Assembly (NCBI GenBank): GCA_977020255.1
Contig: CDROCS010001382.1
Location: 868,001 to 932,000 of the forward strand
Source of the DNA: Obrimoposthia wandeli
Lineage: Eukaryota
Length of the DNA stretch: 64,000 nucleotides
Direction: 5' to 3'
The notes beneath the pieces are model-generated. The model was not told the origin of the DNA and ran no database searches. It was given only the letters and a program-made list of their open reading frames with translations. Position numbers and translations under genes: made by a program. Positions 1,725 through 22,624 of the stretch are shown in pieces; the stretch's first letter is position 1, and each line of letters opens with the position of its first letter.

Positions 1725-1728
1725 CTCT
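1725..1728. other. Target-site duplication CTCT (second copy 22625-22628)
   Basis: gta-CTCT-TGTTAGG at the left end and CCCCAACA-CTCT-ttt at the right end. Confidence 0.9.
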
Positions 1729-2051
1729 TGTTAGGATTAGGTTTTGTTAAAATTAAATAATTAGTTGAATTTATAGTGAATTTATAGTAAAATGAAAATC
1801 CTTGAAAACAAGGTTAAAATTAAATAAAATTTAAATTTAAAATTAAAATGTTAAAAGTAAAAGGAAAATTGAATATTAGAGGACCACGAAGGTCGTGTGA
1901 AATGCGTGAATATATATAATATTAGTTTAAAAAACAAAAGTGCAAAAAAGAAAATTAATTAGAAGATTAACGAAAAGGAAATTAAGAAACGAAGAAAATA
2001 ATCCACGTCGTCAGCCACGTCACCAACAGAAGTAGCAGCTGTTTTCCCGAG

Positions 2052-2096
2052 GTGAGTGGTGACCGGAATTTGCATTAATTAACTTACTAATTTCAG
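2052..2096 (+). other. Predicted 45-nt spliceosomal intron inside the LTR (also 20774-20818)
   Basis: AG|GTGAGT donor, TTACTAAT branch-like motif and TTTCAG| acceptor; identical in both LTRs and close in size to the 43-nt host HPD intron 1. Confidence 0.7.
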
Positions 2097-2412
2097 GACC
2101 GAGAAGCAAGAGGAATCGATTGTCAACTGAGTGACAGACACATACCTGCATAAGCTCTTCAAAATCTACACAGAAATAGACTATATAAGTCTACACTGGA
2201 ATAACCGCAAACCACACACGATCCCCAAAAAAGAAGAGAAGAAGTCATATTATCAAGGAGAAGAAACAGAGTAGACGAATCCACGAATTAAAGGTAAAAG
2301 GAGAAACATCAGCATCACCAAAATTAATACAATACGCGCAGGTCTCGCAGCAACCAGATCTCACTGTCGATATCAACAGCTCAATTCCATTGTTGCAGTT
2401 CAATCGTGCAAG

Positions 2413-2523
2413 TCGCCGCTGCTCAATTCACAGTTGCAGCCCAAGCTCTCAAATTCGCCGCTGCTCAATTCACAGTTGCAGCCCAAGCTCTCAAATTCGC
2501 CGTTGTTCAATTCTACAGTTGCT
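2413..2523 (+). repeat. 42-bp tandem repeat in the LTR (~2.6 copies in 5' LTR, ~1.6 in 3' LTR)
   Basis: Unit tcgccgctgctcaattcacagttgcagcccaagctctcaaat starts at 2413, 2455 and 2497 (partial). Confidence 0.9.
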
Positions 2524-2603
2524 GTCCAGCAGTTCATTTCTGTCTCGCCAATTCGAGAGGACTCATTGATAACCGGAGCAACTAAAGGTATAAATACCGC
2601 AAC

Positions 2604-2958
2604 TTTAAAGGAATTTTGTAACAGTTATTTGAATTTGGAATCATAAATTTAAAGGAATTTTGTAACAATTATTTGAATTTGGAATCATAAATTTAAAGGA
2701 ATTTTGTAACAATTATTTGAATTTGGAATCATAAAATTAAAGGAATTTTGTAACAATTATTTGAATTGGGAATCATAAATTTAAAGGAATTTTGTAACAA
2801 TTATTTGAATTTGGAATCATAAAATTAAAGGAATTTTGTAACAATTATTTGAATTTGGAATCATAAAATTAAAGGAATTTTGTAACAATTATTTTGAATT
2901 GGGAATCATAGATTTAAAGGAATTTTGTAACAATTAATTGAATTGGGAATCATAAATT
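2604..2958 (+). repeat. 44-bp minisatellite in 5' LTR (~8 copies)
   Basis: Unit aaatttaaaggaattttgtaacaattatttgaatttggaatcat with period 44. Confidence 0.95.
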
Positions 2959-3482
2959 GAAAAAGATACTTTGAACCCTAAAATAATCTGTTTTATCAAA
3001 AAGATCTAAACTACCCATAATTTTGAGCAACCAGCTCTAAATTCGTTCCCTATTTTTAGAGCAACCAGCTCTCCAAAATCTGTGCCCTGAGTTTATCCAC
3101 AAGCTAGAGTAAAGACTCAAATAAGCTAACCGACCTTAACGTAAAATCGATACGTGGTTCATCCCCACTTGTGTAGAGACTTACAGAAGTCTTAGGAATT
3201 TTACTACCACTTTTTAGAGAATACGTACGTAAACGTATTGTTGTGTTTAATCTAGTGTGTTAACAATAAACGATTTCCTACATTAGAAAGCATTGTTTTA
3301 AACCCTTCAGATTAAGAGACATCAAAAACAAACACCTTCAGATAAGCAATTGAGACAGGCAACCATAACATTAAGTAGGCCACGATCAACTTTAAGACCT
3401 GCTTCTACAGAACTCACGTTGGGGCCCTCCACATTCAAGAGGATCTATATAAGTTTCATATAGAAACCCCAACATATTAAAG

Positions 3483-3500
3483 TGGTGTCCCGAGTGAGGA
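3483..3500 (+). promoter_or_regulatory. Primer-binding site resembling the complement of the 3' end of elongator tRNA-Met
   Basis: TGGTGTCCCGAGTGAGGA matches at 16/18 the complement of the vertebrate elongator tRNA-Met 3' end (TGGTGCCCCGTGTGAGGA, recalled); it lies 8 nt after the LTR end. Confidence 0.75.
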
Positions 3501-3544
3501 TAGCTCGTCGGACACAGCGAATTCACATAGAATAGAGAGCAAAC

Positions 3545-3885
3545 TGAGAATAAGTTATTGAAGAAATAAGTAAATTGAGAATAAGTTTCAGAAGAAGAAA
3601 ATATAAGTAAATTGAGAATAAGTTTCAGAAGAAGAAAATATAAGCAAATTGAGAATAAGTTTCAGAAGAAGTAGATATAAACAAATTGAGATAAGATAAT
3701 TGATAAGTTTTGAGAAATCGAGTAGATTTGTTCCTCGAGTTAAGAATTTGATAAGTTTTGAGAAATCGAGTAGATTTGTTCCTCGAGTTAAGAATTTGAT
3801 AAGTTTTGTAAAATCGAGTGGATTTGTTCCTCGAATTGAGTAAATTTGATAAAGTTGAGAATCGAGTGGATTGTTACTCGAGGTA
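3545..3885 (+). repeat. Two tandem-repeat blocks in the 5' leader (~38-bp and ~48-bp units, 3-4 copies each)
   Basis: gagaataagtttcagaagaagaaaatataagtaaatt repeats are followed by gataagttttgagaaatcgagtagatttgttcctcgagttaagaattt repeats. Confidence 0.85.
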
Positions 3886-4342
3886 ATTAATTGAATAGGT
3901 TAAGTCGAGAGACGTGTCCTCGAACTAATAAAAGAGATATAAGAAATCGTAAAATAAGAATTGTGAAATAAGATAAAATAATAAGTAAATTGATATCGTA
4001 AACGAATACATAATTGATAAGACAACGGATAATAGAAAAGGACCCGCGTATAATACTAGAAGACAAAGTCAGATTCCCCAGGAAGAGATAAATAATAATA
4101 AATTTAACCGAATTGAACAGGTTCCCCAAACAGATAACAAAGTAACAGAAAAGACTAGAATCGAAGAAAACGTATCAGAAAGAGACGTTGATCAATCAGC
4201 GGTTTCAACCGACAGTTTTAATTTGACTGAATTATTTGGTGACATAAACCCAGAAGAATTTGAAATTGCCAATCCAGTAGTGATTGAGGAAGTTCAAGTG
4301 AAAAATATTGAAGAAATAGTTGAGGAGGATATAGTTGGAAAT

Positions 4343-6457
4343 ATGGCTCAACCAGGAGCTCAAGCAGATAATAATGCAGGAAATAATGTAGGAGAAATGA
4401 ATGCAGAACAGTTGGCACTAGCCTTAAATGCGACGTTGAGACCCAACTTTTCGGGATCATTGCAGATTACAAAGTTTAAAGGAGATGAGGAAAGTATTTG
4501 TGACTTCCTCGCAGAATATTCGAGTTGTGCAGATGTTCAAGGATGGAACGATAGAGAAAAATGTGTCCGTGTACAGGCACACTTAACCGGATTAGCACTT
4601 GAAGTGTATAAACATTTGACAGAAGTAGAACGTTTAGATTGGGCAACGTTGGAAAATGCTTTTATTGGAAAATTGGTATTGGGAGATTTAGCAAAAGTGA
4701 ATAAGCGAATCATGAGAGAACGGAAACAGAAACATGACGAAGGCGTGAATGAATACGCGTATGTTTTGAGAACCTTGGCCGCAAGAGCGTACCCAAGAAG
4801 AATAATGAGAAATCAGGACGGTATTCCTGTAGCTCCAGAAGCACAAGCAGCGGAAAATAACCGGAACCAAGATGAAATGGCAGAAGTTTTGTTAGACATA
4901 TTTAGAGGAGGACTGAAAAAAGATATTAAAGTGTTATTAGCAGTATCGGACACGAATGATTTTGATAACGCCGTACGAAAGGCGAGAGAGATTGAGAAAA
5001 ATATAAAAAATAACGCAGCAATGGCAATTTACGCAATGACTGCAGGTGATGACGATAAGACAAAGGTATTTGTGAATAAGACAGAACCGAGTAATTTTCA
5101 GAATCGAAATTATGGACAAAATAAGTTTGAAAAAGGAGATGAATCCAGTAACGGAAACAGAGATAATTTCCGAAATAGGAATCGAGATGATTCCAGAGGT
5201 AGAAAAAGTAATGATTCGTGGAATAGAAATAGAGATGATTCCAGGAATAGATTTAGTAGAGATAATTCAGGAAATCGCCAACCGTGGAGAGGAGACGATA
5301 GGAATTATAACGCAAACAGAGGAGAGCGAAGTGACTCTCGATTTGAAAATAATACAGGAAGTAGTGACGGAAGATTCAATAATCGAGGAAGCGGTTATAA
5401 TTCCGATAAAGATATACTTACGGGAATTCTCAGGCAAGTGAAGCCGAAGTTGTTCAAAATGTACAAAGATGAAACAACCGATATAACAGACAATTTGACT
5501 AAAGCAGTCAGATCACAAATGTCTGCAGTAAAGAGAATGACTGCGAATCATGTATACCATGCATCAATAGATAGATTTTATGACGGTGAAGTTTTAGCAA
5601 GATTATGTGGAAACCAGACTACGAATAAAAAGTTGATTACGGCGATCACATATCTATGTTTCCAATTGACGGAACGAACGAGCCAACCTCACGAAGTCAA
5701 ACAAGGAATAAATGAAGCGATGTATTTGATCGAAAATGTATTGCAGAGACGAATCGACGAAAACGGAGGTTGGGCAAAATTAAGTGACTACGCTAAAACC
5801 ATTGTGGAAATGAACGAAGACGATGACGAACAATGTCATGAAAATCGTCAAAGAGAAAATAAACAATACCATTCGAAAGAAAGAAACAATCAACCAAATA
5901 TGTCCACAACAATGATGATGATGATGTTAGTAATGTTCATGGGAATGCAACAGGCATCAGGGTTGATAGCATACGACTGTAGCATACCAAAGATGGGACA
6001 AAAGTATTCACTGCTTGACAGCGAAAACTGTCCAGAATCACAACCGTCAAAATTAGAAGTTAAAGGTGTTGAAAACTACTTTGTGTATCAGGATGTTGAT
6101 AAGATACAAGTAGAAGTGAAAGAATGTTCAGTTCATTCAAGTTATTACGAATTCTATTGTGGCCATATAAGTTTTATGTCGGAAATCACACCTACCACAC
6201 CGTACAAAGTACATAAGGTTTTTTCGAGAGATTGCGAAGACGCATTTCGAACAGGAACAATAGAAATAGACAAGAATTACAAGCCTGATGTAAAAGTTGG
6301 AGTAAGACAATACGAAACAGTCACGAGAGTAGGACAACGATGGCCTGATGGATCGTGTGACGGAGGAACAAAAAAACGTGCGTGGAACCAAAGTAACAGA
6401 GTTAGTAATGGACGTAACTTACAAAATAGAATTAAAAACATGGACCGCCAATTTTGA
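4343..6457 (+). CDS. gag: Polyprotein part 1: Gag (~4343-5008), Arg/Asp/Asn/Ser-rich region (~5090-5407), Bcl-2-like domain (~5411-5800), signal peptide (5900-5962), N-terminal part of class III glycoprotein
   Basis: Retrotransposon capsid-like motifs (KFKGDEESICDFL, GWND, QKHDEGVNEYAYVLRTLAARAYP, FRGGL); RRIDENGGWAKLSDY resembles BH2; MMMMMLVMFMGMQQASG|LIAYDC. First ATG at 4343, but the frame is open from 3989. Confidence 0.85.
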   Translation: MAQPGAQADNNAGNNVGEMNAEQLALALNATLRPNFSGSLQITKFKGDEESICDFLAEYSSCADVQGWNDREKCVRVQAHLTGLALEVYKHLTEVERLDWATLENAFIGKLVLGDLAKVNKRIMRERKQKHDEGVNEYAYVLRTLAARAYPRRIMRNQDGIPVAPEAQAAENNRNQDEMAEVLLDIFRGGLKKDIKVLLAVSDTNDFDNAVRKAREIEKNIKNNAAMAIYAMTAGDDDKTKVFVNKTEPSNFQNRNYGQNKFEKGDESSNGNRDNFRNRNRDDSRGRKSNDSWNRNRDDSRNRFSRDNSGNRQPWRGDDRNYNANRGERSDSRFENNTGSSDGRFNNRGSGYNSDKDILTGILRQVKPKLFKMYKDETTDITDNLTKAVRSQMSAVKRMTANHVYHASIDRFYDGEVLARLCGNQTTNKKLITAITYLCFQLTERTSQPHEVKQGINEAMYLIENVLQRRIDENGGWAKLSDYAKTIVEMNEDDDEQCHENRQRENKQYHSKERNNQPNMSTTMMMMMLVMFMGMQQASGLIAYDCSIPKMGQKYSLLDSENCPESQPSKLEVKGVENYFVYQDVDKIQVEVKECSVHSSYYEFYCGHISFMSEITPTTPYKVHKVFSRDCEDAFRTGTIEIDKNYKPDVKVGVRQYETVTRVGQRWPDGSCDGGTKKRAWNQSNRVSNGRNLQNRIKNMDRQF

Positions 6458-8777
6458 TAAAAAGACACAACGAATGATGAAGTATCCGGAATGTAAAATG
6501 ACAGATGCATCTTGTTTTACAGGTGAATCCACAATTGTGTATCACGTGAATCCGAAACAATGCTCTTTAGTATTTTTGAAAGAAATTAGTTTTAATAAAA
6601 TAAAAGGGTTCCTGTATAATAAAGATGGAGAAGGGTTCCTGTATAATAAAGTTGGAGAAGGATTTCACAATGAAACAAGACCAATTCCTATGACGGCGAC
6701 ACCTACACTGTTAATGGCAACATCAACAGAAGAAGGATTGATATTTATTAAAAAGAGAAATAAAGCACGATGCGGAATGACTGTTAGTACTACAAACTAT
6801 CCTGGAATAGTTTTGTCCAGAGAATTAATAGCATTGGCAGAAACCAAGCTAAAACCTAGAGATATGCAGCTACACACGTATTTTAATAATAAAATTGATT
6901 TTTATTATCATAAAGGATTGATGCAAATGGAACAGTTATATCGGATGATGATCGAGAGAGATTGCCAGCTAAACAAAGAGATCGTAAGAACAAAGTTAGC
7001 ATTAGCTATTACGAATCCAGACATGGTAGCACCATTATTACCCTTGGATGAAGGAGTATTTGCTAAAACCATGGGAGAAGTATTGTATACTTACAAGTGT
7101 AATAAAGTAGAAGAACAGTTGAGAAAAACAAGCCGATGTACGAGTGAATTGGCAGTAACACATTATTTAAAAGAACTCTTTGTTGAACCAATCACGAGAA
7201 TGATACTTCCAAAAGACACTCCAACCAAAGAAATCAGCTGCTCTAATATAATGGCACCTGAATATCAGATGACGAATGATCTATGGATAACGCTACCTGA
7301 CCGAAAGCCAACGAAAACTCCAGAGATGATAAAAATGACGAATCTTAAAGGAAAAATGAAATTCGAAGCGGTAGAAAATATGGAAAATGCAGGTTTGTAC
7401 AATGAGAAAGACTTAAAAGCGGCCTGGAACGAAATAATGTTTCCATTAAAAAGAGCCAGAGTACTTACGGAGATGGTGCAGCGAGCATTACCGCCAGGAG
7501 CTAGATATGTGAATTTTGATATGTTATTATTGCCAAGTCATTTCAAGGAAGCAGCACATCAGACACTTAGAAAGATGTGGGGGAAATTCCTTGTTTTAGG
7601 ACAGTTATTTTCAGGTATCATAGGTATTTATGTTATAATTAAATTTGTGCAGGTAATTATAGCCCAGGTGTTATCTACATATAGTTTATACAGGATAGCC
7701 GGAATCACCTGGCAACTTATAATTGGATGTTTTCCATTTTTAGCGAAATATCTAATGCACCATCATCACGAGAACGAGTTGCGAGCCCTCAAGAAGGAGC
7801 AACATCAAACGAGAACCATGATGCGAGAATCAAGAAACTATCGAGACGACAACGACGACGATAATGATAGTCCAGGAGAATATGCAAAGATACCAGGAAA
7901 ACCAAAAATTCCGTTACCAGATAAGGAAGAAGTGGCGTTAAACCTATATCCAATGAAGGAACTAAAGGAAGAGAAGGAAAATTTTAAGAGAGGCATTTTA
8001 ATGATAAGATGGCCTAAAGTGAGCTACAGTGAGATTCCACAAGCAGAGGAAAAATACAAAAAAGATAATTCCAGAAGAATTCTAAAGTCTAGGATATCCA
8101 ATGAGAATCCAAATGCTCCACCACAAGTAGCAGTAACACTGAACGGAAGAGAATATCTTGCTGAAGTTGATACTGGATCTGCAGTATCAGTACTGAGTAA
8201 AGAAATCTTGTCATCAAAAGAATTAAAGGAAGTATGTCCTAGAAAACAGACATTTGTTAACGTGAATGGTACAGATGTAATGTCAGAAGGAACACTGAAA
8301 TGTTCATTGAATATCGATAGAAGAGCATTGCAGTTAAATGCTAGAATATTCAGAGATTGTGGTAGCCCAGTCATGATTGGGATGGACGTAATAAGGATGT
8401 TTGAAGGAATAATTATATTACCAAATAACAAGAGTTATAAGAACGACAGTTCATTGAGAGAGATAAAAATGTTGAGAGGACCTATAGTCGAAAAGGAAAA
8501 ATACACTATGTTCCGTATGGGAAATCCGTACCAAGATAAGAAACAGGAAGCGCTAGTAAAGTCGATACTTCACTACAAAGATGTAAACTCCGGACCACAA
8601 GCTATGACGAGGAGGAAAATAACATATGTGAATCTGTCAGAAAAGGATCCCATGAGATTCGAGAAAAATAGTCGAAAATCACTAGAACTGTACTATTCAA
8701 AAGAAATGGCACGTAAAATGGCAAGAACAGGATTAGAAATGTTAAAGCGACAAGTAGTTATGGTCATGAGGAAGTAG
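6348..8777 (+). CDS. env: Polyprotein part 2 (after +1 shift at the A7 run 6370-6376): rest of chuvirus-like glycoprotein with TM region (to ~7757), retropepsin 1 (~8124-8420), start of BIR1
   Basis: Motifs recalled from chuvirus G proteins (DCQLNKEIVRTKLALAITNPD, GEVLYTYKC, LFVEPITR, AGLYNEKDL, IMFP, hydrophobic C-terminus); VDTGS at 8166 and IGMDV. Confidence 0.85.
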   Translation: MDRVTEEQKNVRGTKVTELVMDVTYKIELKTWTANFDKKTQRMMKYPECKMTDASCFTGESTIVYHVNPKQCSLVFLKEISFNKIKGFLYNKDGEGFLYNKVGEGFHNETRPIPMTATPTLLMATSTEEGLIFIKKRNKARCGMTVSTTNYPGIVLSRELIALAETKLKPRDMQLHTYFNNKIDFYYHKGLMQMEQLYRMMIERDCQLNKEIVRTKLALAITNPDMVAPLLPLDEGVFAKTMGEVLYTYKCNKVEEQLRKTSRCTSELAVTHYLKELFVEPITRMILPKDTPTKEISCSNIMAPEYQMTNDLWITLPDRKPTKTPEMIKMTNLKGKMKFEAVENMENAGLYNEKDLKAAWNEIMFPLKRARVLTEMVQRALPPGARYVNFDMLLLPSHFKEAAHQTLRKMWGKFLVLGQLFSGIIGIYVIIKFVQVIIAQVLSTYSLYRIAGITWQLIIGCFPFLAKYLMHHHHENELRALKKEQHQTRTMMRESRNYRDDNDDDNDSPGEYAKIPGKPKIPLPDKEEVALNLYPMKELKEEKENFKRGILMIRWPKVSYSEIPQAEEKYKKDNSRRILKSRISNENPNAPPQVAVTLNGREYLAEVDTGSAVSVLSKEILSSKELKEVCPRKQTFVNVNGTDVMSEGTLKCSLNIDRRALQLNARIFRDCGSPVMIGMDVIRMFEGIIILPNNKSYKNDSSLREIKMLRGPIVEKEKYTMFRMGNPYQDKKQEALVKSILHYKDVNSGPQAMTRRKITYVNLSEKDPMRFEKNSRKSLELYYSKEMARKMARTGLEMLKRQVVMVMRK

Positions 8778-9277
8778 AACGATGCGTATGGTGTAGAGTA
8801 AAATTTAGAAAATGGGAGAAGAATGAAAACCTTATGAAACGTCATAAAAGAGATGCACCAAATTGTCCATTTCTCTTGAAACTGAAAACTTCAAACGTAC
8901 CAGAAATCCAAATGGGAAAAGCACCCGATTTCGATTACAGTGACGAGATTCCAAAAGGAGAATCAGCTCTAATAGTAGGCAGAGTAATAACAAATAGCCG
9001 AATTGAAGACATATTCGAAGTTATGCGAGAAGTGAACGAATGTGACGAACAATATCGAGAAGTAACTTTCGAAGATCCAAGACTTAAAAAATTTGCAAAA
9101 AAGGGACTTTTTGCTATAAAAAAGGATGGTAAAGACGTAATTAAATGCCACAAGTGTAAAAAAGAACGAATTATCGACAGATATACTCTTGAGTTACCTA
9201 AGAAAACGTTACATAATGAATTTTGCGAATTTTGTAATTCTAAAAACAAAATAAAGCAAAAAGAACAGAAAACCTAA
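8734..9277 (+). CDS. Polyprotein part 3 (after -1 shift near 8733): BIR1 C-terminal half and BIR2
   Basis: CVWC-x16-H-x6-C (RCVWCRVKFRKWEKNENLMKRHKRDAPNCPFL). Adding one T at ggatt(t)aga restores KMARTGF. Second CHKC-x18-H-x6-C is preceded by FAKKGLF. Confidence 0.85.
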
Positions 9278-13909: not shown

Positions 13910-14722
13910 CCGGAAGTAACAAACAATAAAATCATTAAAGCAACGGCAGAGTTACGCATTGACAGCGGATACCGCAAGTGGGAAGCTAAAAATAAACCAC
14001 AACGAATCAATATGATCCGAGAACAAGTGACAACCTCAATCCAACCAAAATATCATGCTGAAATAGTATCATCCGCACCAAGTGTGATTACATCGATAAA
14101 CGACGAAATTATAATTTTACTAAAAAATCGATGGCCGTCATCAACCGAGATACGAGTCAATTTAATTAATTATGCGAAAACACCGATATCTAAGCTGAAT
14201 GTCACCTATTTCGATGGATTGACTATCATGGGTAAATTGGAAACAATTGTCATGTGCTATGGAGCACAGTTCCAAGTTGAGATACTTAAGGATAGTGTAA
14301 TACCGTATCCGATTCACAGATACGCAGGACCAGTCAATCCAATTATTCTAACCCCTTCATTAATTTCAGTTCAGACAGACATACCAGAATACCCTTCGAG
14401 CGAGTCTAGTCAAGACAGCGAACCTGAAAGTAGCGATCCAGAATCAACAGAATCCGAAGATAACATAATAGAGCGATTCGAAAAAACCATGGAGGTTGAA
14501 TTCGCTAAAGAAAGCAGAAAAAGACAAAACATAGAATTCGTGAAACAGAATATACAAGAAAGACGAATTAAATCTGCAGAAGAGACCGAGTCGGAAGAGG
14601 AACCAACAAAGGAACAGACATCAGAGACAAAGATGAATATCTCTCCAGCAATACGAATGCTGAGAGGAAAGAAACTAGCGAAACTATCCAACATCGACGG
14701 ACAAATAAAGAAGAGATTATAA
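13910..14722 (+). CDS. Polyprotein part 6: third copy of the repeat domain and an acidic Ser-rich linker
   Basis: In frame across TAA at 13907; EIIILLKN...RVNLI...TYFDGLTI aligns with the copies at ~13298-13560 and ~13637-13890. Confidence 0.75.
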   Translation, partial: PEVTNNKIIKATAELRIDSGYRKWEAKNKPQRINMIREQVTTSIQPKYHAEIVSSAPSVITSINDEIIILLKNRWPSSTEIRVNLINYAKTPISKLNVTYFDGLTIMGKLETIVMCYGAQFQVEILKDSVIPYPIHRYAGPVNPIILTPSLISVQTDIPEYPSSESSQDSEPESSDPESTESEDNIIERFEKTMEVEFAKESRKRQNIEFVKQNIQERRIKSAEETESEEEPTKEQTSETKMNISPAIRMLRGKKLAKLSNIDGQIKKRL

Positions 14723-17700
14723 AGACTAAAACTTGAAGAGTCAGAATTAATGCCACCAATGAGTGAGATCATTCCAGGTAAGTTATACCTCGGAAATGTG
14801 GAAGATGCAACAGACGAAAAGAAACTGTCGGAACAAGGGATAACATACGTGATCAACGTTACAATGAATCACAAATCACAATATCAGACGATCAGAGCCA
14901 TGATGTTAAGAGTAAAAGACTCAATGGAAGCTAACCTTCTCGAATGGTTCGTAGAAACAAACGAGATACTTCACAGAGAACTCCAAAACCAAGGAAAAGT
15001 GTTGGTACATTGTCAGAAAGGAATCTCCCGATCAGCAACCCTAGTATTAGCGTATCTAATAAAGACTAGACGAATGCAGGTACTAGAAGCGTTGAAATAC
15101 CTACAGGAAAGAAGAAGTATCGCGAACCCAAACCTTAATTTTTTGGGACAATTGTCAAATTATCAACTCCTGTTGCAAGAACAGAGACGGATGGACGACA
15201 TCCCTGAGGATCCAAAGGAAAAGAATTTCCTCCAAGCACTATCGTTGACCGGGTTATTCTTAGCCGGAGTCGACAAAATTACGCAGATAATGCCAAAAGT
15301 ATTTTTATGTTATCCAGGAGATATAGATACTGCTGGATTAAAGTTCCACAGTATCAACCGAGTAATTAATATTGTTGAAGTCGGAAATGAGATAATCAGT
15401 CTGTGTCAAAATACTGAAGATGACACAACTCGATACATACATGCTTCCAATCGAGAGATAAATGATGCACAACAACATCTGATGAAATTGACTCAAACCA
15501 TTCAAGCCGAAGTCACAGAAGGAAACGGCGTTCTGATATATCAGAAAAAAGGTACAATGTTAGCTCCAACCATAGGTGTATCCTTGTTGGTAGAGTACCA
15601 TGGTCATACACCAGAAGAAGCGATGGTTTATATCAAACAGAATAGACCAGACACGGAATTCAAACCGTTACTCGTTCGAGAAATAGATAAATATTCCGAA
15701 AAGAGGAAGCAACAACAAGAAACAAATGAAGCTACCACAACAGTGCCCAGCTATCAATACCAAAGATTGCTAGCACTAGGCTTGTTAAGTTGTCTAATGC
15801 CGATAACGGGAGCACAAGAGATAGGCTCCAACCACGGAAATAGTTCATGGTTCACAGAAATCAACAACTACATCATACAGTACCATACACCAGCACTGAT
15901 GATGCTATTAGTGTTGTTAGGACTAATTGATGTGTGGGTTATCCGAAAATGTCTCCGATCCATGAGAACCGACAGTAAAAGATTCCAGTTTGTGAAAATG
16001 AAGAGACCAAATGGACCAACGAACCAAGTACTTGTGTATCTAGACGAAAGGATCGAGGATAACATAGTAAATGTAGCGATATTCTATCCACAAAACAGAG
16101 TACTGAATCAATTCCGAATAGATTACGAAGCTGACCGACAGCGCACACTTGACCGAATATCAGCAACATTCGCCGAATGCAAGCGAAGAAAACGAATTGT
16201 AAAGGAAATACAAAAAGATGCGGATAAAAAAGGTCCGACGTATATATTCGACGGCGATGTCATCAAAACACGTGAGTATGGAAGTAAGAGAGTGATAATT
16301 GAAACGATGGAAGAACATAAAAAATGTTTGTCCGCCAAAAATGGATTCGGAAAGTTGATGATACAAGGTAAACAGGTACAGTTGATTATCGGAAAAACTG
16401 GAATCGAAGAAATGTCAGAACAACGACAGACAACAAAACGACCTAACCAGAAACAGATATCTCTCAAACGAATGATAATTAAAACCCTTTGCAAAAGGAC
16501 AATCAAGGCCCTGTGCACCGTTGCACAAGGATTGATCTACGGAGTAGTAATTGGATTGGTACTACAAGCCATGCCAACCAGTAAAGCTGAATTGATGACA
16601 CTATCCGAATATAATTTACATTTGAGAAATCTAGACAACACCCTAGAAATAATCAAGACGTCCCACAGTAAAGCCGTGATGATCATGTGTGTGAAAGGAT
16701 GTCCAGGACGAATGTGTATAGTCCCAGCGACCGAAATGAAAACACTTAATGGACATTATAGAGTTAGTGTTGTTACATGTGAAGATTACACATTTAGACA
16801 AACTAAAATAGTACTTCTCAGTGACATGTCCAACCAAAGTGTACATAAATTTAAAATATTAACCATCAAGAGCAAAGGGATACCAGCAATACGTTATGGT
16901 ATTCTAGAATTGGTTAATCCAATACTGGCATTGATCATTGGATTTATAATATTAATATTACTCATCTTGTTTTGTTGTACAAAGATAGAGTTGAGATCAA
17001 AAAAGAAACGTCATGATCTCGCAAGACAAACAGGTCAAATGAATTTACAAAAATTCAACACAAGTATACCAAGACCAGCATTCCTAAATGAACCAGCACC
17101 AGAGTACCAGCCAACGATATATGAACATATCGAGGAAAGACCGTACTATATGAGTAACTTGAGTTGTTCCAGAGAAGTTCCTGAGTTTCGGAACCGGACG
17201 ATCATAGGAATCATGCTGATCATACAAATTACCACGACCAAGGCTAGTTATGAGATCATGATCAGTAAATGGAGACAAGATACAATACGGGCGTTATACA
17301 TAGAAATTCCCCTATTAAAAACAAATCACGTAGTAGACATTCACCTACAGACGTCAGCAACCGACAATGTCGATCAGAAATTGTATGTCATCCGACAGGT
17401 CAGAATAAAGATCGACCAACGTACACCTTACTACCGACTGATATTATTCTATCATGAAAGGGTGTTATACCTACGGATAACGATATCAAAGAGGAAACGG
17501 ATTATTCAAAGTATCCGAACAAAGTCAATAATATTGCCTAGAGATGAGCGCATCTGGAAAGTTGTCGACAGGATTATGATCACAGGTAGACGACGTAAAA
17601 CCGTATGGAATTCCGTTAGAATATTTTTCAGATTGTTAGAAACCGACCATGCAACAGTGGCGTGTCCCAATCCAGATGGTGGAATCAGATTTGAATTGCA

Positions 17701-18487
17701 AAACCAAATGTTAGTACCACATTTTGATGCAGAATGTATATGTAACCGAATTCCCAGCAATGCTAGAGAGACCACTACCATAATCATGGTAATAACAGGT
17801 GAAATATTCTACATAACTCTAAGATACCAGACACGTCGATTCCGTGGACTCGGTATAAGTATTAAACCCAGGAAAATCAATTCCGGAAAACCAATCAAGG
17901 TCATAAAAAAGGAAAAGGTGAAAGGAAGTAAACGTCACTCCAAAATGCCAGTCATAATCAAAGAGAAGACAAAGATAAACGGAAGTAAACGTCATTCCGA
18001 GAAGCCAAAAATAGTCATAACCAAGGCAGAAGTGAAAGGAAAAGAGCTCGAGCCCAGAAACCAAAGTACAATTATTAAGAGGACAAGAGTGAGGGGAACG
18101 ATCCCACTAGATCCCAAACATAATTTCCAATCTAAATTAATAATACCTGTTCCACCGGAAACAAAATATCCAAATCCGCGAGTTTTTAGAAAATCGGACA
18201 TAATACATGGAAACCGATCAACACCAATGGAAACGCCATTCAAACCGACAAACAACAAAATGGAATACGATTATCAATCGTTTGACAGCGGAATAACAGC
18301 GGTCAATGCTCTAATTGGAATGGCCGTAGTGTCAACAGCAGTGGTCCTATTGACAGTCGTGTGCGTGAAAGGCAGTCAAGTATGCCCAAGAATACGACGG
18401 AAATGCGAAGGACTGCGATGCTGTAACACACCCACAATGGAGGAAGTGGAATTGCGACCCTTACCTCCGCCTCCCATCAAGATATGA
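14723..18487 (+). CDS. Polyprotein part 7: dual-specificity phosphatase, inactive second DSP domain, then alternating signal-like and TM segments
   Basis: SEIIPGKLYLG...VINVT...HCQKGISRS...PNLNFLGQL; second copy ITQIMPKVFL...VINIV...YQKKGTMLA; hydrophobic segments at ~15767, 15893, 16511, 16922, 17198 and 18308. In frame across TAA at 14720. Confidence 0.88.
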   Translation, partial: RLKLEESELMPPMSEIIPGKLYLGNVEDATDEKKLSEQGITYVINVTMNHKSQYQTIRAMMLRVKDSMEANLLEWFVETNEILHRELQNQGKVLVHCQKGISRSATLVLAYLIKTRRMQVLEALKYLQERRSIANPNLNFLGQLSNYQLLLQEQRRMDDIPEDPKEKNFLQALSLTGLFLAGVDKITQIMPKVFLCYPGDIDTAGLKFHSINRVINIVEVGNEIISLCQNTEDDTTRYIHASNREINDAQQHLMKLTQTIQAEVTEGNGVLIYQKKGTMLAPTIGVSLLVEYHGHTPEEAMVYIKQNRPDTEFKPLLVREIDKYSEKRKQQQETNEATTTVPSYQYQRLLALGLLSCLMPITGAQEIGSNHGNSSWFTEINNYIIQYHTPALMMLLVLLGLIDVWVIRKCLRSMRTDSKRFQFVKMKRPNGPTNQVLVYLDERIEDNIVNVAIFYPQNRVLNQFRIDYEADRQRTLDRISATFAECKRRKRIVKEIQKDADKKGPTYIFDGDVIKTREYGSKRVIIETMEEHKKCLSAKNGFGKLMIQGKQVQLIIGKTGIEEMSEQRQTTKRPNQKQISLKRMIIKTLCKRTIKALCTVAQGLIYGVVIGLVLQAMPTSKAELMTLSEYNLHLRNLDNTLEIIKTSHSKAVMIMCVKGCPGRMCIVPATEMKTLNGHYRVSVVTCEDYTFRQTKIVLLSDMSNQSVHKFKILTIKSKGIPAIRYGILELVNPILALIIGFIILILLILFCCTKIELRSKKKRHDLARQTGQMNLQKFNTSIPRPAFLNEPAPEYQPTIYEHIEERPYYMSNLSCSREVPEFRNRTIIGIMLIIQITTTKASYEIMISKWRQDTIRALYIEIPLLKTNHVVDIHLQTSATDNVDQKLYVIRQVRIKIDQRTPYYRLILFYHERVLYLRITISKRKRIIQSIRTKSIILPRDERIWKVVDRIMITGRRRKTVWNSVRIFFRLLETDHATVACPNPDGGIRFELQNQMLVPHFDAECICNRIPSNARETTTIIMVITGEIFYITLRYQTRRFRGLGISIKPRKINSGKPIKVIKKEKVKGSKRHSKMPVIIKEKTKINGSKRHSEKPKIVITKAEVKGKELEPRNQSTIIKRTRVRGTIPLDPKHNFQSKLIIPVPPETKYPNPRVFRKSDIIHGNRSTPMETPFKPTNNKMEYDYQSFDSGITAVNALIGMAVVSTAVVLLTVVCVKGSQVCPRIRRKCEGLRCCNTPTMEEVELRPLPPPPIKI

Positions 18488-18611
18488 TAAGTCAGAGGAG
18501 GTTGTAGATAAATTAGTGTGTGAAATATGTAGAAATATCTAGAAGCGATTGTACAAATAAGTAGAAATATGTAAAACTCATGTAGAAATTAATCATCATC
18601 ATGTATTTAGA

Positions 18612-18911
18612 ATGTCCGAAGAATGCCCAATATGTTTGGAAGATCTAACCGAACAAAGAACAAGACCCGAAACCTGCAACCATTTACATCACGAGGAATG
18701 TTTATCAAAATGGATCAGAACTTATGGAAAATTCGTACATCCAACATACCCTCGTTGCCCTGTATGCAGAAGACAATTCACAAAGTTCATCATGATAGAA
18801 CCCAACCAAAAGGATGTATATGTACAGGTGATATTCTGTTGGAAGAATTTCAGAGAGTGTTGGTGTTACTACTGTCTGTCAGAACGACAAAATCCGACCA
18901 CTTTTGTGTAA
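18612..18911 (+). CDS. Small RING-H2 protein 1 (99 aa), putative E3 ligase
   Basis: CPIC-x13-CNHLHHEEC...W...CPVC; acceptor TATTTAG ends 1 nt before the ATG. Confidence 0.85.
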   Translation: MSEECPICLEDLTEQRTRPETCNHLHHEECLSKWIRTYGKFVHPTYPRCPVCRRQFTKFIMIEPNQKDVYVQVIFCWKNFRECWCYYCLSERQNPTTFV

Positions 18912-18971
18912 ACATCGCACAACCACCAGTCCTCAATCGAGCCCAAATTCAACATTAACCCTCTCACAGTA

Positions 18972-19277
18972 ATGTCTGGAGAATGTTCCATCTGCTACGA
19001 GAACATCGTGGACCTCTACACCAAACCCAACAACTGCAACCACCAGTTCCACATCGAATGCCTCGAGACGTGGATCCCAATAGCCAACAACAACAATCCC
19101 CTCGACTACCCAAACTGCCCGATGTGCAGAGCAACCTTCTCGGTGCACTACGTCTACAACCGGGACAGCCTCCAAGCAGTGGTACCCATTGTACACTGTT
19201 GGAAAAACATCTGCGACTGCTGGTGTTCGTTCTACGTGGAGGAGCGACGCACAGGCCAGCCCAACACCCAGCAGTAA
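18972..19277 (+). CDS. Small RING-H2 protein 2 (101 aa), paralog of protein 1
   Basis: CSIC...CNHQFHIEC..W...CPMC and shared C-terminal CWKN..CWC; acceptor TTAACCCTCTCACAG ends 2 nt before the ATG. Confidence 0.85.
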   Translation: MSGECSICYENIVDLYTKPNNCNHQFHIECLETWIPIANNNNPLDYPNCPMCRATFSVHYVYNRDSLQAVVPIVHCWKNICDCWCSFYVEERRTGQPNTQQ

Positions 19278-19628
19278 CCGAAGGTAACTTTCTGACTTAA
19301 AACGTGACATCATGAACTACCCCTGTGTATCGCATACCGCGATAAATTAGCTACCATAATTGTAATCATAATTGTATAATCTTGTGAAACTGTAAAATGA
19401 CCATTACCATTTTTATGTATGTTGTTTATTTGAAATTGTAATTATTATACTGAAACAAAAGACAATTTTTATGCTTAGTATAAATGTGAAAAAACATGCC
19501 TAAAATCGGAACAAAACTCGGTAGGATTAAAATACTAAGGTTTATAATATTGAAACTAAAATATTAATTGCGTAAATTAATGTTAAAACCAATCGAACCC
19601 AAATTAAAAAAGTAATTATTTTGTGCAG

Positions 19629-20141
19629 ATGATTTGTTCAATTTGCCTCGAGAAGATCTGGGCAACGTCGGCATCCCCTGTCGGTTGTCGACAGAAATTC
19701 CACGAGTCCTGCATCTACTTGTGGGCCAGAGCTCGACTCCCCGGCCACATCACCTGCCCGATGTGCCGGGCACCCTTTACCGAGTGGACGCTCCAGTGCC
19801 GTGGACGACTCATGGGCACCCGCTCGCCCACCAGCTGCATTGGTGGCGAGCACTGTCAGTGCTCCATATGCCTCGCGCGCCGTCGCGACGCACGGCTCTC
19901 CATCCGAGAGAGGTGGCGATCCAGCCACGACAGCCACTCGTGGCAGCATAACCGACAAATGTGGCTCCAAAACCACAATTTGTACAGATCAGACACCGAC
20001 CTGTTTCGCCCAAGCCCACACCTCAGCATCGCACAGCAGATGGCCCTATTCCTGGAAGACACCCCATCCTTCCCGGACTTGCCACTGGAGCAAGTCCTGT
20101 TCTTCTTGGACGACCGAAACACGCCGGACGTGGACAATTAA
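19629..20141 (+). CDS. RING-H2-variant protein 3 (170 aa), GC-rich
   Basis: CSIC...CRQKFHESC..W...CPMC (first His replaced by Gln) plus C-x4-HCQCSIC; acceptor TTATTTTGTGCAG directly precedes the ATG. Confidence 0.8.
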   Translation: MICSICLEKIWATSASPVGCRQKFHESCIYLWARARLPGHITCPMCRAPFTEWTLQCRGRLMGTRSPTSCIGGEHCQCSICLARRRDARLSIRERWRSSHDSHSWQHNRQMWLQNHNLYRSDTDLFRPSPHLSIAQQMALFLEDTPSFPDLPLEQVLFFLDDRNTPDVDN

Positions 20142-20250
20142 CACTGATTTCCCCTTCATCCTTTTCTTGACCGCAACAATTAACATGACATCCAACCCAT
20201 TCACCTTCCTGATCCTTTCCTTGTCTGTAAATCATTTTTTCTTTGTGTAT

Positions 20251-20256
20251 AATAAA
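20251..20256 (+). terminator. Candidate internal polyadenylation signal after RING ORF 3
   Basis: AATAAA ~110 nt after the stop and ~195 nt before the 3' LTR; weak because the region is AT-rich. Confidence 0.35.
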
Positions 20257-20450
20257 TTAGTGAATATTTTAGACTCTGTCTAAATATTCGCTATTTTGAC
20301 GAAAACCGAGTTTTGGCAAAACGTTTGGGCCTGTTTGATGAGTTGAATGACTGAATTAGTAGGGATGAACTTAAAATCAACAGCCCAGAGGCTTGTAAGA
20401 GTAAAATCGATACGTTCCGGGGACGTAACTTTTTTAGAACCCCCGAGATA

Positions 20451-22624
20451 TGTTAGGATTAGGTTTTGTTAAAATTAAATAATTAGTTGAATTTATAGTG
20501 AATTTATAGTAAAATGAAAATCCTTGAAAACAAGGTTAAAATTAAATAAAATTAAAATTTAGAATTAAAATGTTAAAAGTAAAAGGAAAATTGAATATTA
20601 GAGGACCACGAAGGTCGTGTGAAATGCGTGAATATATATAATATTAGTTTAAAAAACAAAAGTGCAAAAAAGAAAATTAATTAGAAGATTAACGAAAAGG
20701 AAATTAAGAAACGAAGAAAATAATCCACGTCGTCAGCCACGTCACTAACAGAAGTAGCAGCTGTTTTCCTGAGGTGAGTGGTGACCGGAATTTGCATTAA
20801 TTAACTTACTAATTTCAGGACCGAGAAGCAAGAGGAATCGATTGTCAACTGAGTGACAGACACATACCTGCATAAGCTCTTCAAAATCTACACAGAAATA
20901 AGCAAGAGGAATCGATTGTCAACTGAGTGACAGACACATACCTGCATAAGCTCTTCAAAATCTACACAGAAATAGACTATATAAGTCTACACTGGAATAA
21001 CCGCAAACCACACACGATCCCCAAAAAAGAAGAGAAGAAGTCATATTATCAAGGAGAAGAAACAGAGTAGACGAATCCACGAATTAAAGGTAAAAGGAGA
21101 AACATCAGCATCACCAAAATTAATACAATACGCGCAGGTCTCGCAGCAACCAGATCTCACTGTCGATATCAACAGCTCAATTCCACTGTTGCAGTTCAAT
21201 CGTGCAAGTCGCCGCTGCTCAATTCACAGTTGCAGCCCAAGCTCTCAAATTCGCCGTTGTTCAATTCCACAGTTGCTGTCCAGCAGTTCATTTCTGTCTC
21301 GCCAATTCGAGAGGACTCATTGATAACTGGAGCAACTAAAGGTATAAATACCGCAACTTTAAAGGAATTTTGTAACAGTTATTTGAATTTGGAATCATAA
21401 ATTTAAAGGAATTTTGTAACAATTATTTGAATTTGGAATCATAAATTTAAAGGAATTTTGTAACAGTTATTTGAATTTGGAATCATAAAATTAAAGGAAT
21501 TTTGTAACAATTATTTGCATTGGGAATCATAAATTTAAAGGAATTCTGTAACAATTATTTGCATTGGGAATCATAAATTTAAAGGAATTCTGTAACAATT
21601 ATTTGAATTGGGAATCATAAATTTAAAGGAATTTTGTAACAGTTATTTGAATTTGGAATCATAAATTTAAAGGAATTTTGTAACAATTATTTGAATTGGG
21701 AATCATAAATTTAAAGGAATTTTGTAACAATTATTTGCATTGGGAATCATAAATTTAAAGGAATTCTGTAACAATTATTTGAATTGGGAATCATAAATTT
21801 AAAGGAATTTTGTAACAGTTATTTGAATTTGGAATCATAAATTTAAAGGAATTTTGTAACAATTATTTGAATTGGGAATCATAAATTTAAAGGAATTTTG
21901 TAACAATTATTTGAATTTGGAATCATCAAATTAAAGGAATTTTGTAACAATTATTTGAATTGGGAATCATAAATTTAAAGGAATTTTGTAACAATTATTT
22001 GAATTTGGAATCATCAAATTAAAGGAATTTTGTAACAATTATTTTGAATTGGGAATCATAGATTTAAAGGAATTTTGTAACAATTAATTGAAATGGGAAT
22101 CATAAATTGAAAAAGATACTTTGAACCCTAAAATAATCTGTTTTATCAAAAAGATCTAAACTACCCATAATTTTGAGCAACCAGCTCTAAATTCGTTCCC
22201 TATTTTTAGAGCAACCAGCTCTCCAAAATCTGTGCCCTGAGTTTATCCACAAGCTAGAGTAAAGACTCAAATAAGCTAACCGACCTTAACGTAAAATCGA
22301 TACGTGGTTCATCCCCACTTGTGTAGAGACTTACAGAAGTCTTAGGAATTTTACTACCACTTTTTAGAGAATACGTACGTAAACGTATTGTTGTGTTTAA
22401 TCTAGTGTGTTAACAATAAACGATTTCCTACATTAGAAAGCGTTGTTTTAAACCCTTCAGATTAAGAGACATCAAAAACAAACACCTTCAGATAAGCAAT
22501 TGAGACAGGCAACCATAACATTAAGTAGGCCACGACCAACTTTAAGACCTGCTTCTACAGAACTCACGTTGGGGCCCTCCACATTCAAGAGGATCTATAT
22601 AAGTTTCATATAGAAACCCCAACA
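20451..22624 (+). repeat. 3' LTR (2,174 bp)
   Basis: Same termini as the 5' LTR; about 10 substitutions counted by eye outside the arrays; carries a 74-bp duplication (20827-20900/20901-20974), ~17 copies of the 44-bp unit and one fewer 42-bp unit. Confidence 0.97.
21358..22107 (+). repeat. 44-bp minisatellite in 3' LTR (~17 copies)
   Basis: Same unit as 2604-2958, with variants ttgcattggg and gaattctgta seen only here. Confidence 0.95.

What the first reader, a model, noticed from the sequence alone, without database searches (positions are those of the whole stretch)
1729..22624. 20.9-kb enveloped-virus-like Gypsy element with a ~4,700-aa multi-cargo polyprotein
Seen: intact termini, TSD and PBS. 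From ATG 4343 to 18487 is 4,715 codons once +1 and -1 indels are fixed and four TAA are read as sense. It strings Gag, Bcl-2-like, class III Env, PR, IAP, PR, RT, RH, IN, 3x repeat, DSP, pseudo-DSP and membrane modules, followed by three RING genes. Known: typical Gypsy elements are ~5-8 kb; giant cargo-bearing 'Burro' LTR elements were reported in Schmidtea mediterranea (Grohme et al. 2018), so overlap must be checked. Inference: this looks like an infectious retrovirus-like agent with a host-manipulation toolkit usually associated with large DNA viruses.
Basis: partly seen in the sequence, partly recalled or inferred. Interest (0 to 1): 0.95.

Follow-up and report, generated by a model that had tools for sequence, protein, structure and literature searches.

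The report
Decayed giant Burro-like flatworm retroelement
This is a real 20.9-kb retrovirus-like mobile element in a flatworm genome whose single huge protein carries a viral fusion glycoprotein plus anti-cell-death, ubiquitin and phosphatase modules, but this copy is broken and the design is already published for the planarian 'Burro' elements.

Summary
At 1729-22624 lies a 20,896-bp Ty3/Gypsy LTR element with TG..CA ends, a 4-bp target duplication and LTRs 0.7% diverged. One 4,715-codon reading span (4343-18487) carries, in order: Gag-like, Bcl-2-like, a chuvirus/gB-type class III envelope, protease, BIR plus IAP-type RING, a second protease, RT, RNase H, integrase, a weak threefold repeat, an MKP-type phosphatase with intact catalytic loop, a pseudo-phosphatase, and a 930-residue region with four membrane segments. 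Three small paralogous RING-H2 genes follow.

This copy is defective, with two frameshifts and four in-frame stops. That is about what neutral decay since insertion predicts.

Relatives found through env (33-43% identical in env, about 60% in RT and IN) also carry Env-PR-RT-RH-IN in one ORF, so the backbone is not a chimera. None of them shares the BIR, RING, phosphatase or membrane cargo.

The design is already published: env in frame between gag and pol, with BCL2-like, BIR and RING cargo, for Burro/GYPSM1 (Arkhipova & Yushenova 2019), and GAG-ENV-POL gB-type elements in Platyhelminthes (eLife 2026). What may be new is the phosphatase and membrane cargo. Infectivity is not shown. Verdict: new member of a known kind, moderate interest.

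The parts
1725..1728 (.). Target-site duplication, left copy (CTCT)
1729..3474 (+). 5' LTR, 1,746 bp. Starts TG, ends CA. Holds a 44-nt tandem array of 8.1 copies.
3483..3500 (+). PBS-like stretch beginning TGG, 8 nt after the LTR. tRNA not identified.
3541..3886 (+). Leader with 37-nt and 48-nt tandem repeats
4343..18487 (+). Giant polyprotein gene of 4,715 codons, given as one part. Broken by two frameshifts and four in-frame TAA stops. Ends in TGA.
4343..5119 (+). Gag-like N-terminal region (Pfam core 4577-4792, weak). No CCHC knuckle. Followed to about 5400 by an Arg/Asn/Asp/Ser-rich low-complexity stretch.
5420..5830 (+). Bcl-2-like helical domain (Pfam core 5585-5773), with a conserved GGW
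5900..7690 (+). Envelope glycoprotein: internal signal-like hydrophobic start, chuvirus/gB-type class III ectodomain, membrane anchor at about 7593-7688. The cytoplasmic tail runs on to 8126.
8127..8396 (+). Aspartyl protease 1 (DTG present)
8771..8875 (+). BIR zinc-binding half (CX2C..H..C). A second, weaker BIR-like stretch lies at 9068-9166.
9521..9652 (+). IAP-type C3HC4 RING
9758..10051 (+). Aspartyl protease 2 (LIDTGA)
10706..11758 (+). Reverse transcriptase (YIDD, 10706-11176) and RNase H (11369-11758)
12092..13150 (+). Integrase: HHCC zinc domain, DDE core, C-terminal domain
13360..14290 (+). Three divergent repeats of about 70-80 residues with no known family, followed to about 14719 by an acidic Ser/Glu-rich linker
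14783..15166 (+). Dual-specificity phosphatase 1, MKP-type, with HCxxGxxRS and the general-acid Asp present
15287..15694 (+). Dual-specificity phosphatase-like domain 2, lacking the catalytic Cys and Arg (pseudo-phosphatase)
15695..18484 (+). 930-residue stop-free region of unknown family with four strong membrane segments (15887-15943, 16508-16564, 16922-16978, 18311-18367)
18612..18911 (+). RING-H2 gene 1 (99 aa), intact
18972..19277 (+). RING-H2 gene 2 (101 aa), intact, 38% identical to gene 1
19623..20141 (+). RING-H2 gene 3 (172 aa as listed; first Met at the third codon), intact, 30-33% identical to genes 1 and 2
20451..22624 (+). 3' LTR, 2,174 bp. 44-nt array of 17.1 copies and a 74-nt unit duplicated.
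22625..22628 (.). Target-site duplication, right copy (CTCT)

Best explanation
This is a recently inserted, already defective copy of a giant Ty3/Gypsy endogenous-retrovirus-like element of the Burro kind, sitting in a flatworm genome.

Shown:
- It integrated as an LTR element: LTR pair, TG..CA ends, 4-bp duplication.
- It encodes one very long polyprotein, followed by three small RING-H2 genes. The polyprotein order is Gag-like, Bcl-2-like, signal-like start, class III envelope, membrane anchor, PR, BIR and IAP RING, PR, RT, RNase H, IN, repeats, active-looking MKP-type phosphatase, pseudo-phosphatase, multi-membrane region.
- The backbone is shared with a clade of env-bearing relatives. The cargo is not.

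Inferred:
- The full-length LTR transcript is translated into the polyprotein.
- The internal signal-like segment puts the envelope ectodomain into the ER lumen, while Gag/Bcl-2-like upstream and PR-to-phosphatase downstream stay cytosolic. The polyprotein is therefore threaded through the membrane much as in polyprotein RNA viruses.
- The element's own proteases cut the cytosolic parts. Reverse transcription and integration then follow the usual Ty3/Gypsy route.
- The cargo plausibly keeps the producing cell alive and quiet: Bcl-2-like and IAP-like modules against apoptosis, RING ligases acting on ubiquitin pathways, and the phosphatase acting on MAP-kinase signalling.
- The six interruptions are ordinary decay after insertion.
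For: LTRs, termini and duplication.

Domains.

Envelope: Pfam Monjiviricetes_fusion E 1.6e-69. Foldseek hits to chuvirus-type glycoproteins at E 1e-13 and to herpesvirus gB only.

Relatives: seven relatives at or below 43% env identity carry Env-PR(x1-3)-RT-RH-IN in one ORF, up to 4,844 aa. RT-RH is 59-62% and IN 58-60% identical to those relatives, against 50-56% and 40-43% to ordinary Gypsy elements. A Bcl-2-like stretch lies directly before env in two relatives.

Coding and composition: an A-rich composition runs evenly through 4-18 kb. The last 930 codons are stop-free, ln P about -64 by composition.

Decay: LTR divergence is 7/1015, which predicts about 2.7 new stops against 4 seen.

Host: the neighbouring DDAH gene is closest to trematode DDAH.

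Published parallel: PMC6431247 and PMC13524379.
Against: - Gag and Bcl-2 assignments rest on sub-threshold Pfam scores and low-confidence models (pLDDT 55-56).
- No second copy of this family could be examined. The cargo after integrase, the BIR/RING module and the three RING genes are therefore seen in one copy only.
- No polypurine tract is evident before the 3' LTR. The PBS partner tRNA is unknown.
- Membrane topology, processing and all cargo functions are inference.
- Membership in Burro proper could not be tested, because no Burro reference sequence was available.
Confidence: 0.8

Rival explanations
1. One-off composite: the post-integrase cargo (repeats, phosphatases, membrane region, RING genes) was captured from host genes or another element in this copy or in a very recent ancestor. 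It would then not be a stable part of the family.
For: None of the 155 related proteins held matches any of these modules, while all backbone modules match. The phosphatase is closest to cellular MKP-type DUSPs, at 34-39% identity. The RING-gene region has a higher G+C, 0.44.
Against: The cargo continues in the same reading frame as integrase and has the same A-rich composition. No internal LTRs or large repeats bound it. The 930-codon run is stop-free. The three RING genes are old paralogues, 30-38% identical with no DNA similarity, so they were kept for a long time. Relatives also have long post-integrase extensions, about 1,500 residues in a 4,844-aa relative.
Confidence: 0.1
2. The interruptions are not decay. 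They are either programmed recoding signals (stop read-through, frameshifting) that set protein ratios, or errors of the assembly, so the copy is effectively intact.
For: All four in-frame stops are TAA while the true end is TGA. The LTRs are young, 0.7% diverged. Long-read assemblies of AT-rich genomes make indel errors (own knowledge).
Against: Relatives read uninterrupted through the same junctions. One frameshift falls inside the envelope domain itself and the other inside the IAP-like module, which are not plausible regulatory sites. Four stops is close to the 2.7 expected from LTR divergence, and codons one step from TAA are the commonest near-stop class (22.5% of codons).
Confidence: 0.08
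3. A chance neighbourhood: an endogenous fragment of a negative-strand RNA virus glycoprotein lying inside or next to an ordinary Gypsy element, rather than a true envelope gene of the element.
For: The glycoprotein family is that of chuviruses and mononegaviruses. Such genes are known as stand-alone endogenous viral elements (literature cited in PMC13524379).
Against: The glycoprotein sits in the polyprotein frame between Gag/Bcl-2-like and PR. The same arrangement recurs in at least seven distant relatives, and env similarity tracks RT and IN similarity.
Confidence: 0.02

Closest known systems
Burro / GYPSM1 giant Gypsy elements of Schmidtea mediterranea and the Burro-like element of Girardia (Dugesia) tigrina (Jurka 2007; Grohme et al. 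2018; Arkhipova & Yushenova 2019, PMC6431247)
   Same: LTR Gypsy backbone. One giant polyprotein starting with Gag. BCL2-like motif directly before an envelope that lies in frame between gag and pol and resembles mononegavirus-type fusion glycoproteins. BIR and RING cargo. Accessory ORFs. Flatworm host. Interpreted as integrated proviruses meddling with apoptosis and ubiquitination.
   Different: This element is 20.9 kb, not over 30 kb. No CCHC knuckles, MATH/TRAF, Ubl/SUMO, dUTPase, ankyrin or Smc motifs were detected. It has two proteases flanking the IAP-like module, an MKP-type phosphatase plus pseudo-phosphatase, a four-segment membrane region and three RING-H2 genes. None of these is mentioned in the review. 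Direct sequence comparison with Burro was not possible.
GAG-ENV-POL Ty3/gypsy 'errantivirus-like' elements with HSV gB-type class III envelopes in Platyhelminthes, Nematoda and Bryozoa (eLife 2026, PMC13524379)
   Same: Gene order gag-env-pol, gB-type class III envelope, flatworm hosts.
   Different: That survey does not describe giant polyproteins or cargo in the text I searched. Planarians and Burro are not mentioned there.
[quoted passage not shown] 2020, as cited in PMC13524379)
   Same: A chuvirus-type glycoprotein recruited by an LTR retroelement.
   Different: Different superfamily (BEL/Pao, not Gypsy). The envelope is not embedded in the polyprotein. No cargo.
Anti-apoptosis and signalling genes of large DNA viruses: baculovirus IAP, herpes/pox viral Bcl-2, poxvirus VH1-type phosphatase, viral RING ligases (own knowledge; functional analogy only)
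   Same: The same kinds of host-control modules. The IAP-type RING matches cIAP/XIAP RINGs. The Bcl-2-like model retrieves cellular and viral Bcl-2 proteins, though not significantly.
   Different: Here they are domains of one retroelement polyprotein. The phosphatase is closest to cellular MAP-kinase phosphatases, not to viral ones. No common descent with those viruses is implied.

Membership tests
Ty3/Gypsy (Metaviridae) LTR retrotransposon | Direct LTR pair bounded by TG..CA | tested here: met
Ty3/Gypsy (Metaviridae) LTR retrotransposon | Short target-site duplication (4-6 bp) | tested here: met
   CTCT on both flanks
Ty3/Gypsy (Metaviridae) LTR retrotransposon | tRNA primer-binding site next to the 5' LTR and polypurine tract before the 3' LTR | tested here: inconclusive
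   A TGG-starting stretch lies 8 nt after the LTR. There is no tRNA to pair it with. No clear purine tract is seen.
Ty3/Gypsy (Metaviridae) LTR retrotransposon | pol order PR-RT-RNase H-IN with Gypsy-type RT | tested here: met
Burro / GYPSM1 giant Gypsy elements | One giant ORF beginning with Gag and holding env in frame between gag and pol | tested here: met
   The architecture is present, though interrupted six times in this copy. It is uninterrupted in relatives.
Burro / GYPSM1 giant Gypsy elements | Envelope related to mononegavirus-type fusion glycoproteins | tested here: met
   Pfam PF24664 E 1.6e-69. BFVD hits to chuvirus-type glycoproteins E 1e-13.
Burro / GYPSM1 giant Gypsy elements | BCL2-like, BIR and RING cargo | tested here: met
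   BIR E 8.5e-10. IAP-type RING. Bcl-2-like is probable only.
Burro / GYPSM1 giant Gypsy elements | CCHC knuckles, MATH/TRAF, Ubl/SUMO, dUTPase, ankyrin, Smc motifs | tested here: not met
   None found by Pfam or by motif search.
Burro / GYPSM1 giant Gypsy elements | Size above 30 kb, internal region up to 25 kb | tested here: not met
   20,896 bp in all. The internal region, 3475-20450, is about 17 kb.
Burro / GYPSM1 giant Gypsy elements | Sequence identity or RT clade shared with the Burro1-4 references | not testable with these tools
   No Burro or Repbase sequence is reachable. The nearest relatives available are unnamed metagenome proteins.
Burro / GYPSM1 giant Gypsy elements | Host in the planarian family Dugesiidae | tested here: inconclusive
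   The host is a flatworm by its DDAH gene, 58-64% identical to the nearest homologues (named ones trematode). The species is not identified, and no window protein is in the collections.
GAG-ENV-POL gB-type errantivirus-like elements | Order gag-env-pol | tested here: met
GAG-ENV-POL gB-type errantivirus-like elements | Class III (gB-type) envelope fold | tested here: inconclusive
   The model has low confidence (pLDDT 56, pTM 0.22). Even so, the top PDB matches listed (ranks 1-50) are all herpesvirus gB, best E 7e-4 with TM only 0.12-0.16. BFVD matches are chuvirus, rhabdo-like and gB glycoproteins.
Retroviridae | env downstream of pol as a spliced gene with a class I fusion subunit; retroviral RT clade | tested here: not met
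   env lies upstream of pol inside the polyprotein and is of the class III kind. The RT is Gypsy-type.

The most novel reading that the evidence does not exclude
The active-looking MKP-type phosphatase fused to a pseudo-phosphatase and a four-segment membrane region, together with three long-retained RING-H2 genes, is a stable and previously undescribed accessory module of a flatworm endogenous-retrovirus lineage. That would mean a retroelement that tunes host MAP-kinase and ubiquitin signalling, not only apoptosis.
Probability: 0.25. Interest if true: 0.65.

Novelty: new member of a known kind. Interest (0 to 1): 0.45.

Why it matters
Burro-like elements are the largest known LTR retroelements. 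They are unusual in packing an envelope protein and host-control modules into one polyprotein.

This copy shows that the lineage is broader than the published Burro families. Its backbone is only about 60% identical to the nearest relatives available. It also shows that the cargo turns over between lineages while the Gag-(Bcl-2-like)-Env-PR-RT-RH-IN core stays fixed.

A retroelement-borne MAP-kinase-type phosphatase, if confirmed in other copies, would add a signalling target to the apoptosis and ubiquitin themes already proposed. This is of interest in flatworms, where these pathways govern stem cells and regeneration. The finding does not change the existing picture of what such elements are.

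Tried and rejected
- Exact look-ups of window proteins: seven ORFs tried, none on record. The source genome and other identical copies could therefore not be traced.
- Search with the phosphatase-bearing stretch against 5.8 billion proteins: only cellular DUSPs over about 12% of the query. That search seeds from the first 500 residues only, so the membrane region was not truly searched.
- Search with the RT-bearing stretch: only generic Gypsy proteins at 37-50% identity.
- PDB sequence searches for the Gag/Bcl-2/env-N stretch, the env-C stretch, the repeats and the membrane region: nothing significant. NCBIfam: nothing.
- Both structure models came out with low confidence. Their Foldseek results are used only as supporting hints.
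- No other copy, solo LTR or fragment of this element lies in the window. No tRNA gene and no Rfam family was found.
- The Grohme et al. 2018 paper is not in the held library. The supplements of the eLife paper are not held.
- Rejected: a variant genetic code reading TAA as sense. Four stops match the decay expectation, and relatives read uninterrupted through the same junctions.
- Rejected: a bacterial origin for the relative named 'Flavobacteriaceae bacterium'. It is a Gypsy polyprotein, so evidently a mis-binned eukaryotic contig.

Full report
WHAT IS THERE

Two direct repeats bound the region: 1729-3474 (1,746 bp) and 20451-22624 (2,174 bp). They begin TG and end CA, and the same four bases, CTCT, flank both ends. 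This is an integrated LTR element of 20,896 bp.

The length difference between the LTRs lies in tandem-unit copy number: a 44-nt array of 8.1 against 17.1 copies, and a 74-nt unit doubled only in the 3' LTR. Outside the arrays the LTRs differ at 7 of 1,015 positions, or 0.69%, so the insertion is young.

A TGG-starting stretch 8 nt after the 5' LTR looks like a primer-binding site. The window holds no tRNA gene to match it. I see no clear polypurine tract before the 3' LTR. The window has no N.

THE CODING PART

From the first ATG at 4343 to the TGA ending at 18487 is 4,715 codons. The span is not open. Counting only, there are two frameshifts and four in-frame stops, all TAA. By module:
- the envelope gene carries one frameshift;
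- the IAP-like module carries one frameshift and one stop;
- pol carries one stop;
- the post-integrase cargo carries two stops.

I searched each open stretch on its own and never joined them.

Pfam, PDB-sequence and motif results give this order:
- A Gag-like start: Retrotrans_gag E 0.024, no CCHC knuckle.
- An Arg/Asn/Asp/Ser-rich stretch.
- A Bcl-2-like domain.
- A Met-rich hydrophobic signal-like segment opening a Monjiviricetes-type fusion glycoprotein (E 1.9e-18 and 1.6e-69 on its two stretches) with a membrane anchor.
- Protease 1 with DTG.
- BIR, E 8.5e-10, with the CX2C..H..C signature.
- An IAP-type RING, matching the cIAP1/2 and XIAP RINGs at E 4e-11 to 1e-10.
- Protease 2.
- RT with YIDD, RNase H, and integrase with HHCC and DDE.
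- Three divergent repeats and an acidic linker.
- A dual-specificity phosphatase closest to the MAP-kinase phosphatases, DUSP10 E 4.9e-25, with HCxxGxxRS intact.
- A second DSP-like domain without the catalytic Cys and Arg.
- 930 residues of no known family with four strong membrane segments.

That last stretch is stop-free against a chance expectation of ln P about -64, so it is or very recently was coding.

Downstream lie three intact small RING-H2 genes. They are paralogues, 30-38% identical, with no remaining DNA similarity. That speaks for long retention.

THE TWO WEAKER DOMAIN CALLS

Bcl-2-like:
- The window's stretch scores only E 0.068 in Pfam.
- A homologous stretch sits directly in front of env in two relatives (local phmmer 2e-7 and 4e-7).
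- One of those relatives hits Pfam Bcl-2 at 9.6e-4 over the same profile positions.
- A GGW, the position of the BH2 signature, is invariant in the three.
- The AlphaFold model is poor (pLDDT 55). Its best PDB matches are almost all Mcl-1, Bcl-xL, Bcl-2, BOK and viral Bcl-2 proteins, at non-significant E-values of 0.12-0.5.
- I call it probable.

Envelope class:
- The model of the larger envelope stretch is also poor (pLDDT 56, pTM 0.22).
- Yet the PDB matches listed (ranks 1-50) are all herpesvirus gB (best E 7e-4, TM only 0.12-0.16).
- The viral library returns chuvirus/mivirus-type glycoproteins at E 1e-13, then rhabdo-like, nyami-, bornavirus glycoproteins and gB.
- With the strong Pfam score, this supports a chuvirus/gB-type class III envelope. 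The fold itself is not proven here.

IS IT A CHIMERA? RELATIVES

A full-library search with the larger envelope stretch found 46 proteins at E up to 1e-30. The best were only 33-43% identical. Many were long polyproteins from metagenome contigs, one cluster holding a 4,844-aa member.

Seven such relatives scanned with Pfam all show Env, then one to three or more proteases, then RT, RNase H and integrase in a single ORF. The window's RT-RNase H is 59-62% identical and its integrase 58-60% identical to those same proteins. Against the best ordinary Gypsy proteins the figures are 50-56% and 40-43%. Envelope and pol have therefore travelled together, and the backbone is a lineage trait, not a nested insertion.

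In contrast, BIR, the IAP RING, the repeats, both phosphatase domains, the membrane region and the three RING genes match nothing in the 155 related proteins held. The phosphatase-bearing stretch finds only cellular DUSPs in the 5.8-billion-protein set.

The cargo is thus lineage-specific, or seen here only. Three things argue that it has been part of the polyprotein for a long time: the same frame, the even A-rich composition from 4 to 18 kb, and the absence of internal bounding repeats. One copy cannot prove this.

WHY IT IS BROKEN

At half the LTR divergence, the 14.1-kb span should have taken about 49 substitutions. Of random substitutions, 5.6% would create a stop, giving about 2.7 expected stops against 4 seen. 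Codons one step from TAA are the commonest near-stop class. Relatives read straight through the corresponding junctions. Decay after insertion is enough. Recoding or a variant code is not needed. Assembly error cannot be excluded from one assembly.

HOST AND SURROUNDINGS

The flanks are 24-30% G+C. An open stretch at 46194-46844 is a dimethylarginine dimethylaminohydrolase gene that appears to read through a short intron. Its nearest relatives are 63-64% identical unnamed metatranscriptome proteins. The nearest named ones are trematode (58-62%), then cestode (about 52%), then Macrostomum (49%). The host is a flatworm, and I could not name the species. No window protein is in the collections.

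HOW IT MOST LIKELY WORKS

Shown:
- integration as an LTR element;
- the module order;
- intact catalytic signatures in both proteases, RT, integrase and the first phosphatase.

Inferred:
- The full-length transcript is translated into one polyprotein.
- The internal signal-like segment sends the envelope ectodomain into the ER lumen, and its anchor returns the chain to the cytosol. The later membrane segments thread it again.
- Host signal peptidase and the element's proteases release the parts.
- The Bcl-2-like and IAP-like modules hold off apoptosis, the RING proteins redirect ubiquitination, and the phosphatase damps MAP-kinase signalling in the producing cell.
- Nothing here bears on particles or spread, and this copy could not supply a working envelope or pol.

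WHAT IS KNOWN

Arkhipova & Yushenova 2019 (PMC6431247) describe Burro/GYPSM1 of Schmidtea mediterranea and a Burro-like element of Girardia tigrina:
- ORF1 is 4,873 and 5,140 aa respectively.
- It runs Gag, BCL2-like, then an envelope in frame between gag and pol with hits to mononegavirus fusion glycoproteins, with BIR, RING, ankyrin and other motifs and accessory ORFs.
- They read these elements as integrated proviruses meddling with apoptosis and ubiquitination.

An eLife 2026 survey (PMC13524379) reports GAG-ENV-POL Ty3/gypsy elements with gB-type class III envelopes in Platyhelminthes, Nematoda and Bryozoa. BURRO1 is expressed and piRNA-controlled in planarians (PMC8532177).

A phosphatase is not mentioned in the review, and my literature search found no LTR-element phosphatase report. 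That part may be new.

The element also differs from published Burro in several ways. It is smaller, at 20.9 kb. I found no CCHC, MATH/TRAF, Ubl, dUTPase or ankyrin motifs. It has a protease on each side of the IAP-like module. Identity with Burro could not be measured, because no reference sequence was reachable.

STEPS LEFT OUT, AND A SLIP

Left out:
- I never read across a stop or frameshift.
- I did not fetch any named animal virus. Virus names come only from Pfam and Foldseek tables.
- I did not look up the DNA contigs of the relatives or scan public collections by pattern for further copies. These are virus-like elements of animals, and I could not tell whether the bar on fetching applies.
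- The alignment used for the envelope model (A1) holds the window's stretch and 17 search hits as they stand. Its consensus line was not used.

Those bounds border the interruptions.

VERDICT

The element is a new member of a known kind, with a possibly new cargo module. Interest is moderate.

Noticed in passing
window 46194-46844 (+): Host dimethylarginine dimethylaminohydrolase (DDAH) gene piece that seems to read through a short AT-rich intron. Its nearest homologues are 63-64% identical unnamed proteins. The nearest named ones are trematode, 58-62% identical. This places the window in a flatworm.
   Followed up: yes
window 55557-56291 (+): Remnant of a different retroelement: a translated match of 250 residues, 30% identical to this element's RT-RNase H (E 9e-31). 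It coincides with a local rise in G+C.
   Followed up: partly
window 58145-59752 (-): Intronless 535-aa ORF in a G+C-richer island with two RING-like Cys/His clusters (Pfam zf-C3HC4 only at E 0.005). No significant similarity to the element's RING genes, and not on record in the collections.
   Followed up: partly
window 2604-2962 and 21358-22112: The 44-nt tandem array in the LTR has 8.1 copies in the 5' LTR and 17.1 in the 3' LTR of the same insertion, so the array changes copy number quickly. Its role (enhancer-like?) is unknown.
   Followed up: no
relatives P0159, P0011, P0009 (proteins, not in the window): Relatives carry three to five or more retropepsin-like domains in one polyprotein, one of them after integrase in the 4,844-aa protein. 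Repeated proteases seem to be a trait of this clade.
   Followed up: partly
inside the envelope gene (part 5900-7690): A short tandem duplication whose unit is a multiple of three bases (27 nt, about 2.3 copies) was reported by Tandem Repeats Finder.
   Followed up: no
relative P0014 (protein, not in the window): A 2,627-aa Env-PR-RT-RH-IN polyprotein is deposited as a hypothetical protein of a 'Flavobacteriaceae bacterium' metagenome-assembled genome. This is evidently a mis-binned eukaryotic contig.
   Followed up: no
window 1156-1312: A 60-nt tandem repeat (2.6 copies) lies in the left flank, just outside the element.
   Followed up: no
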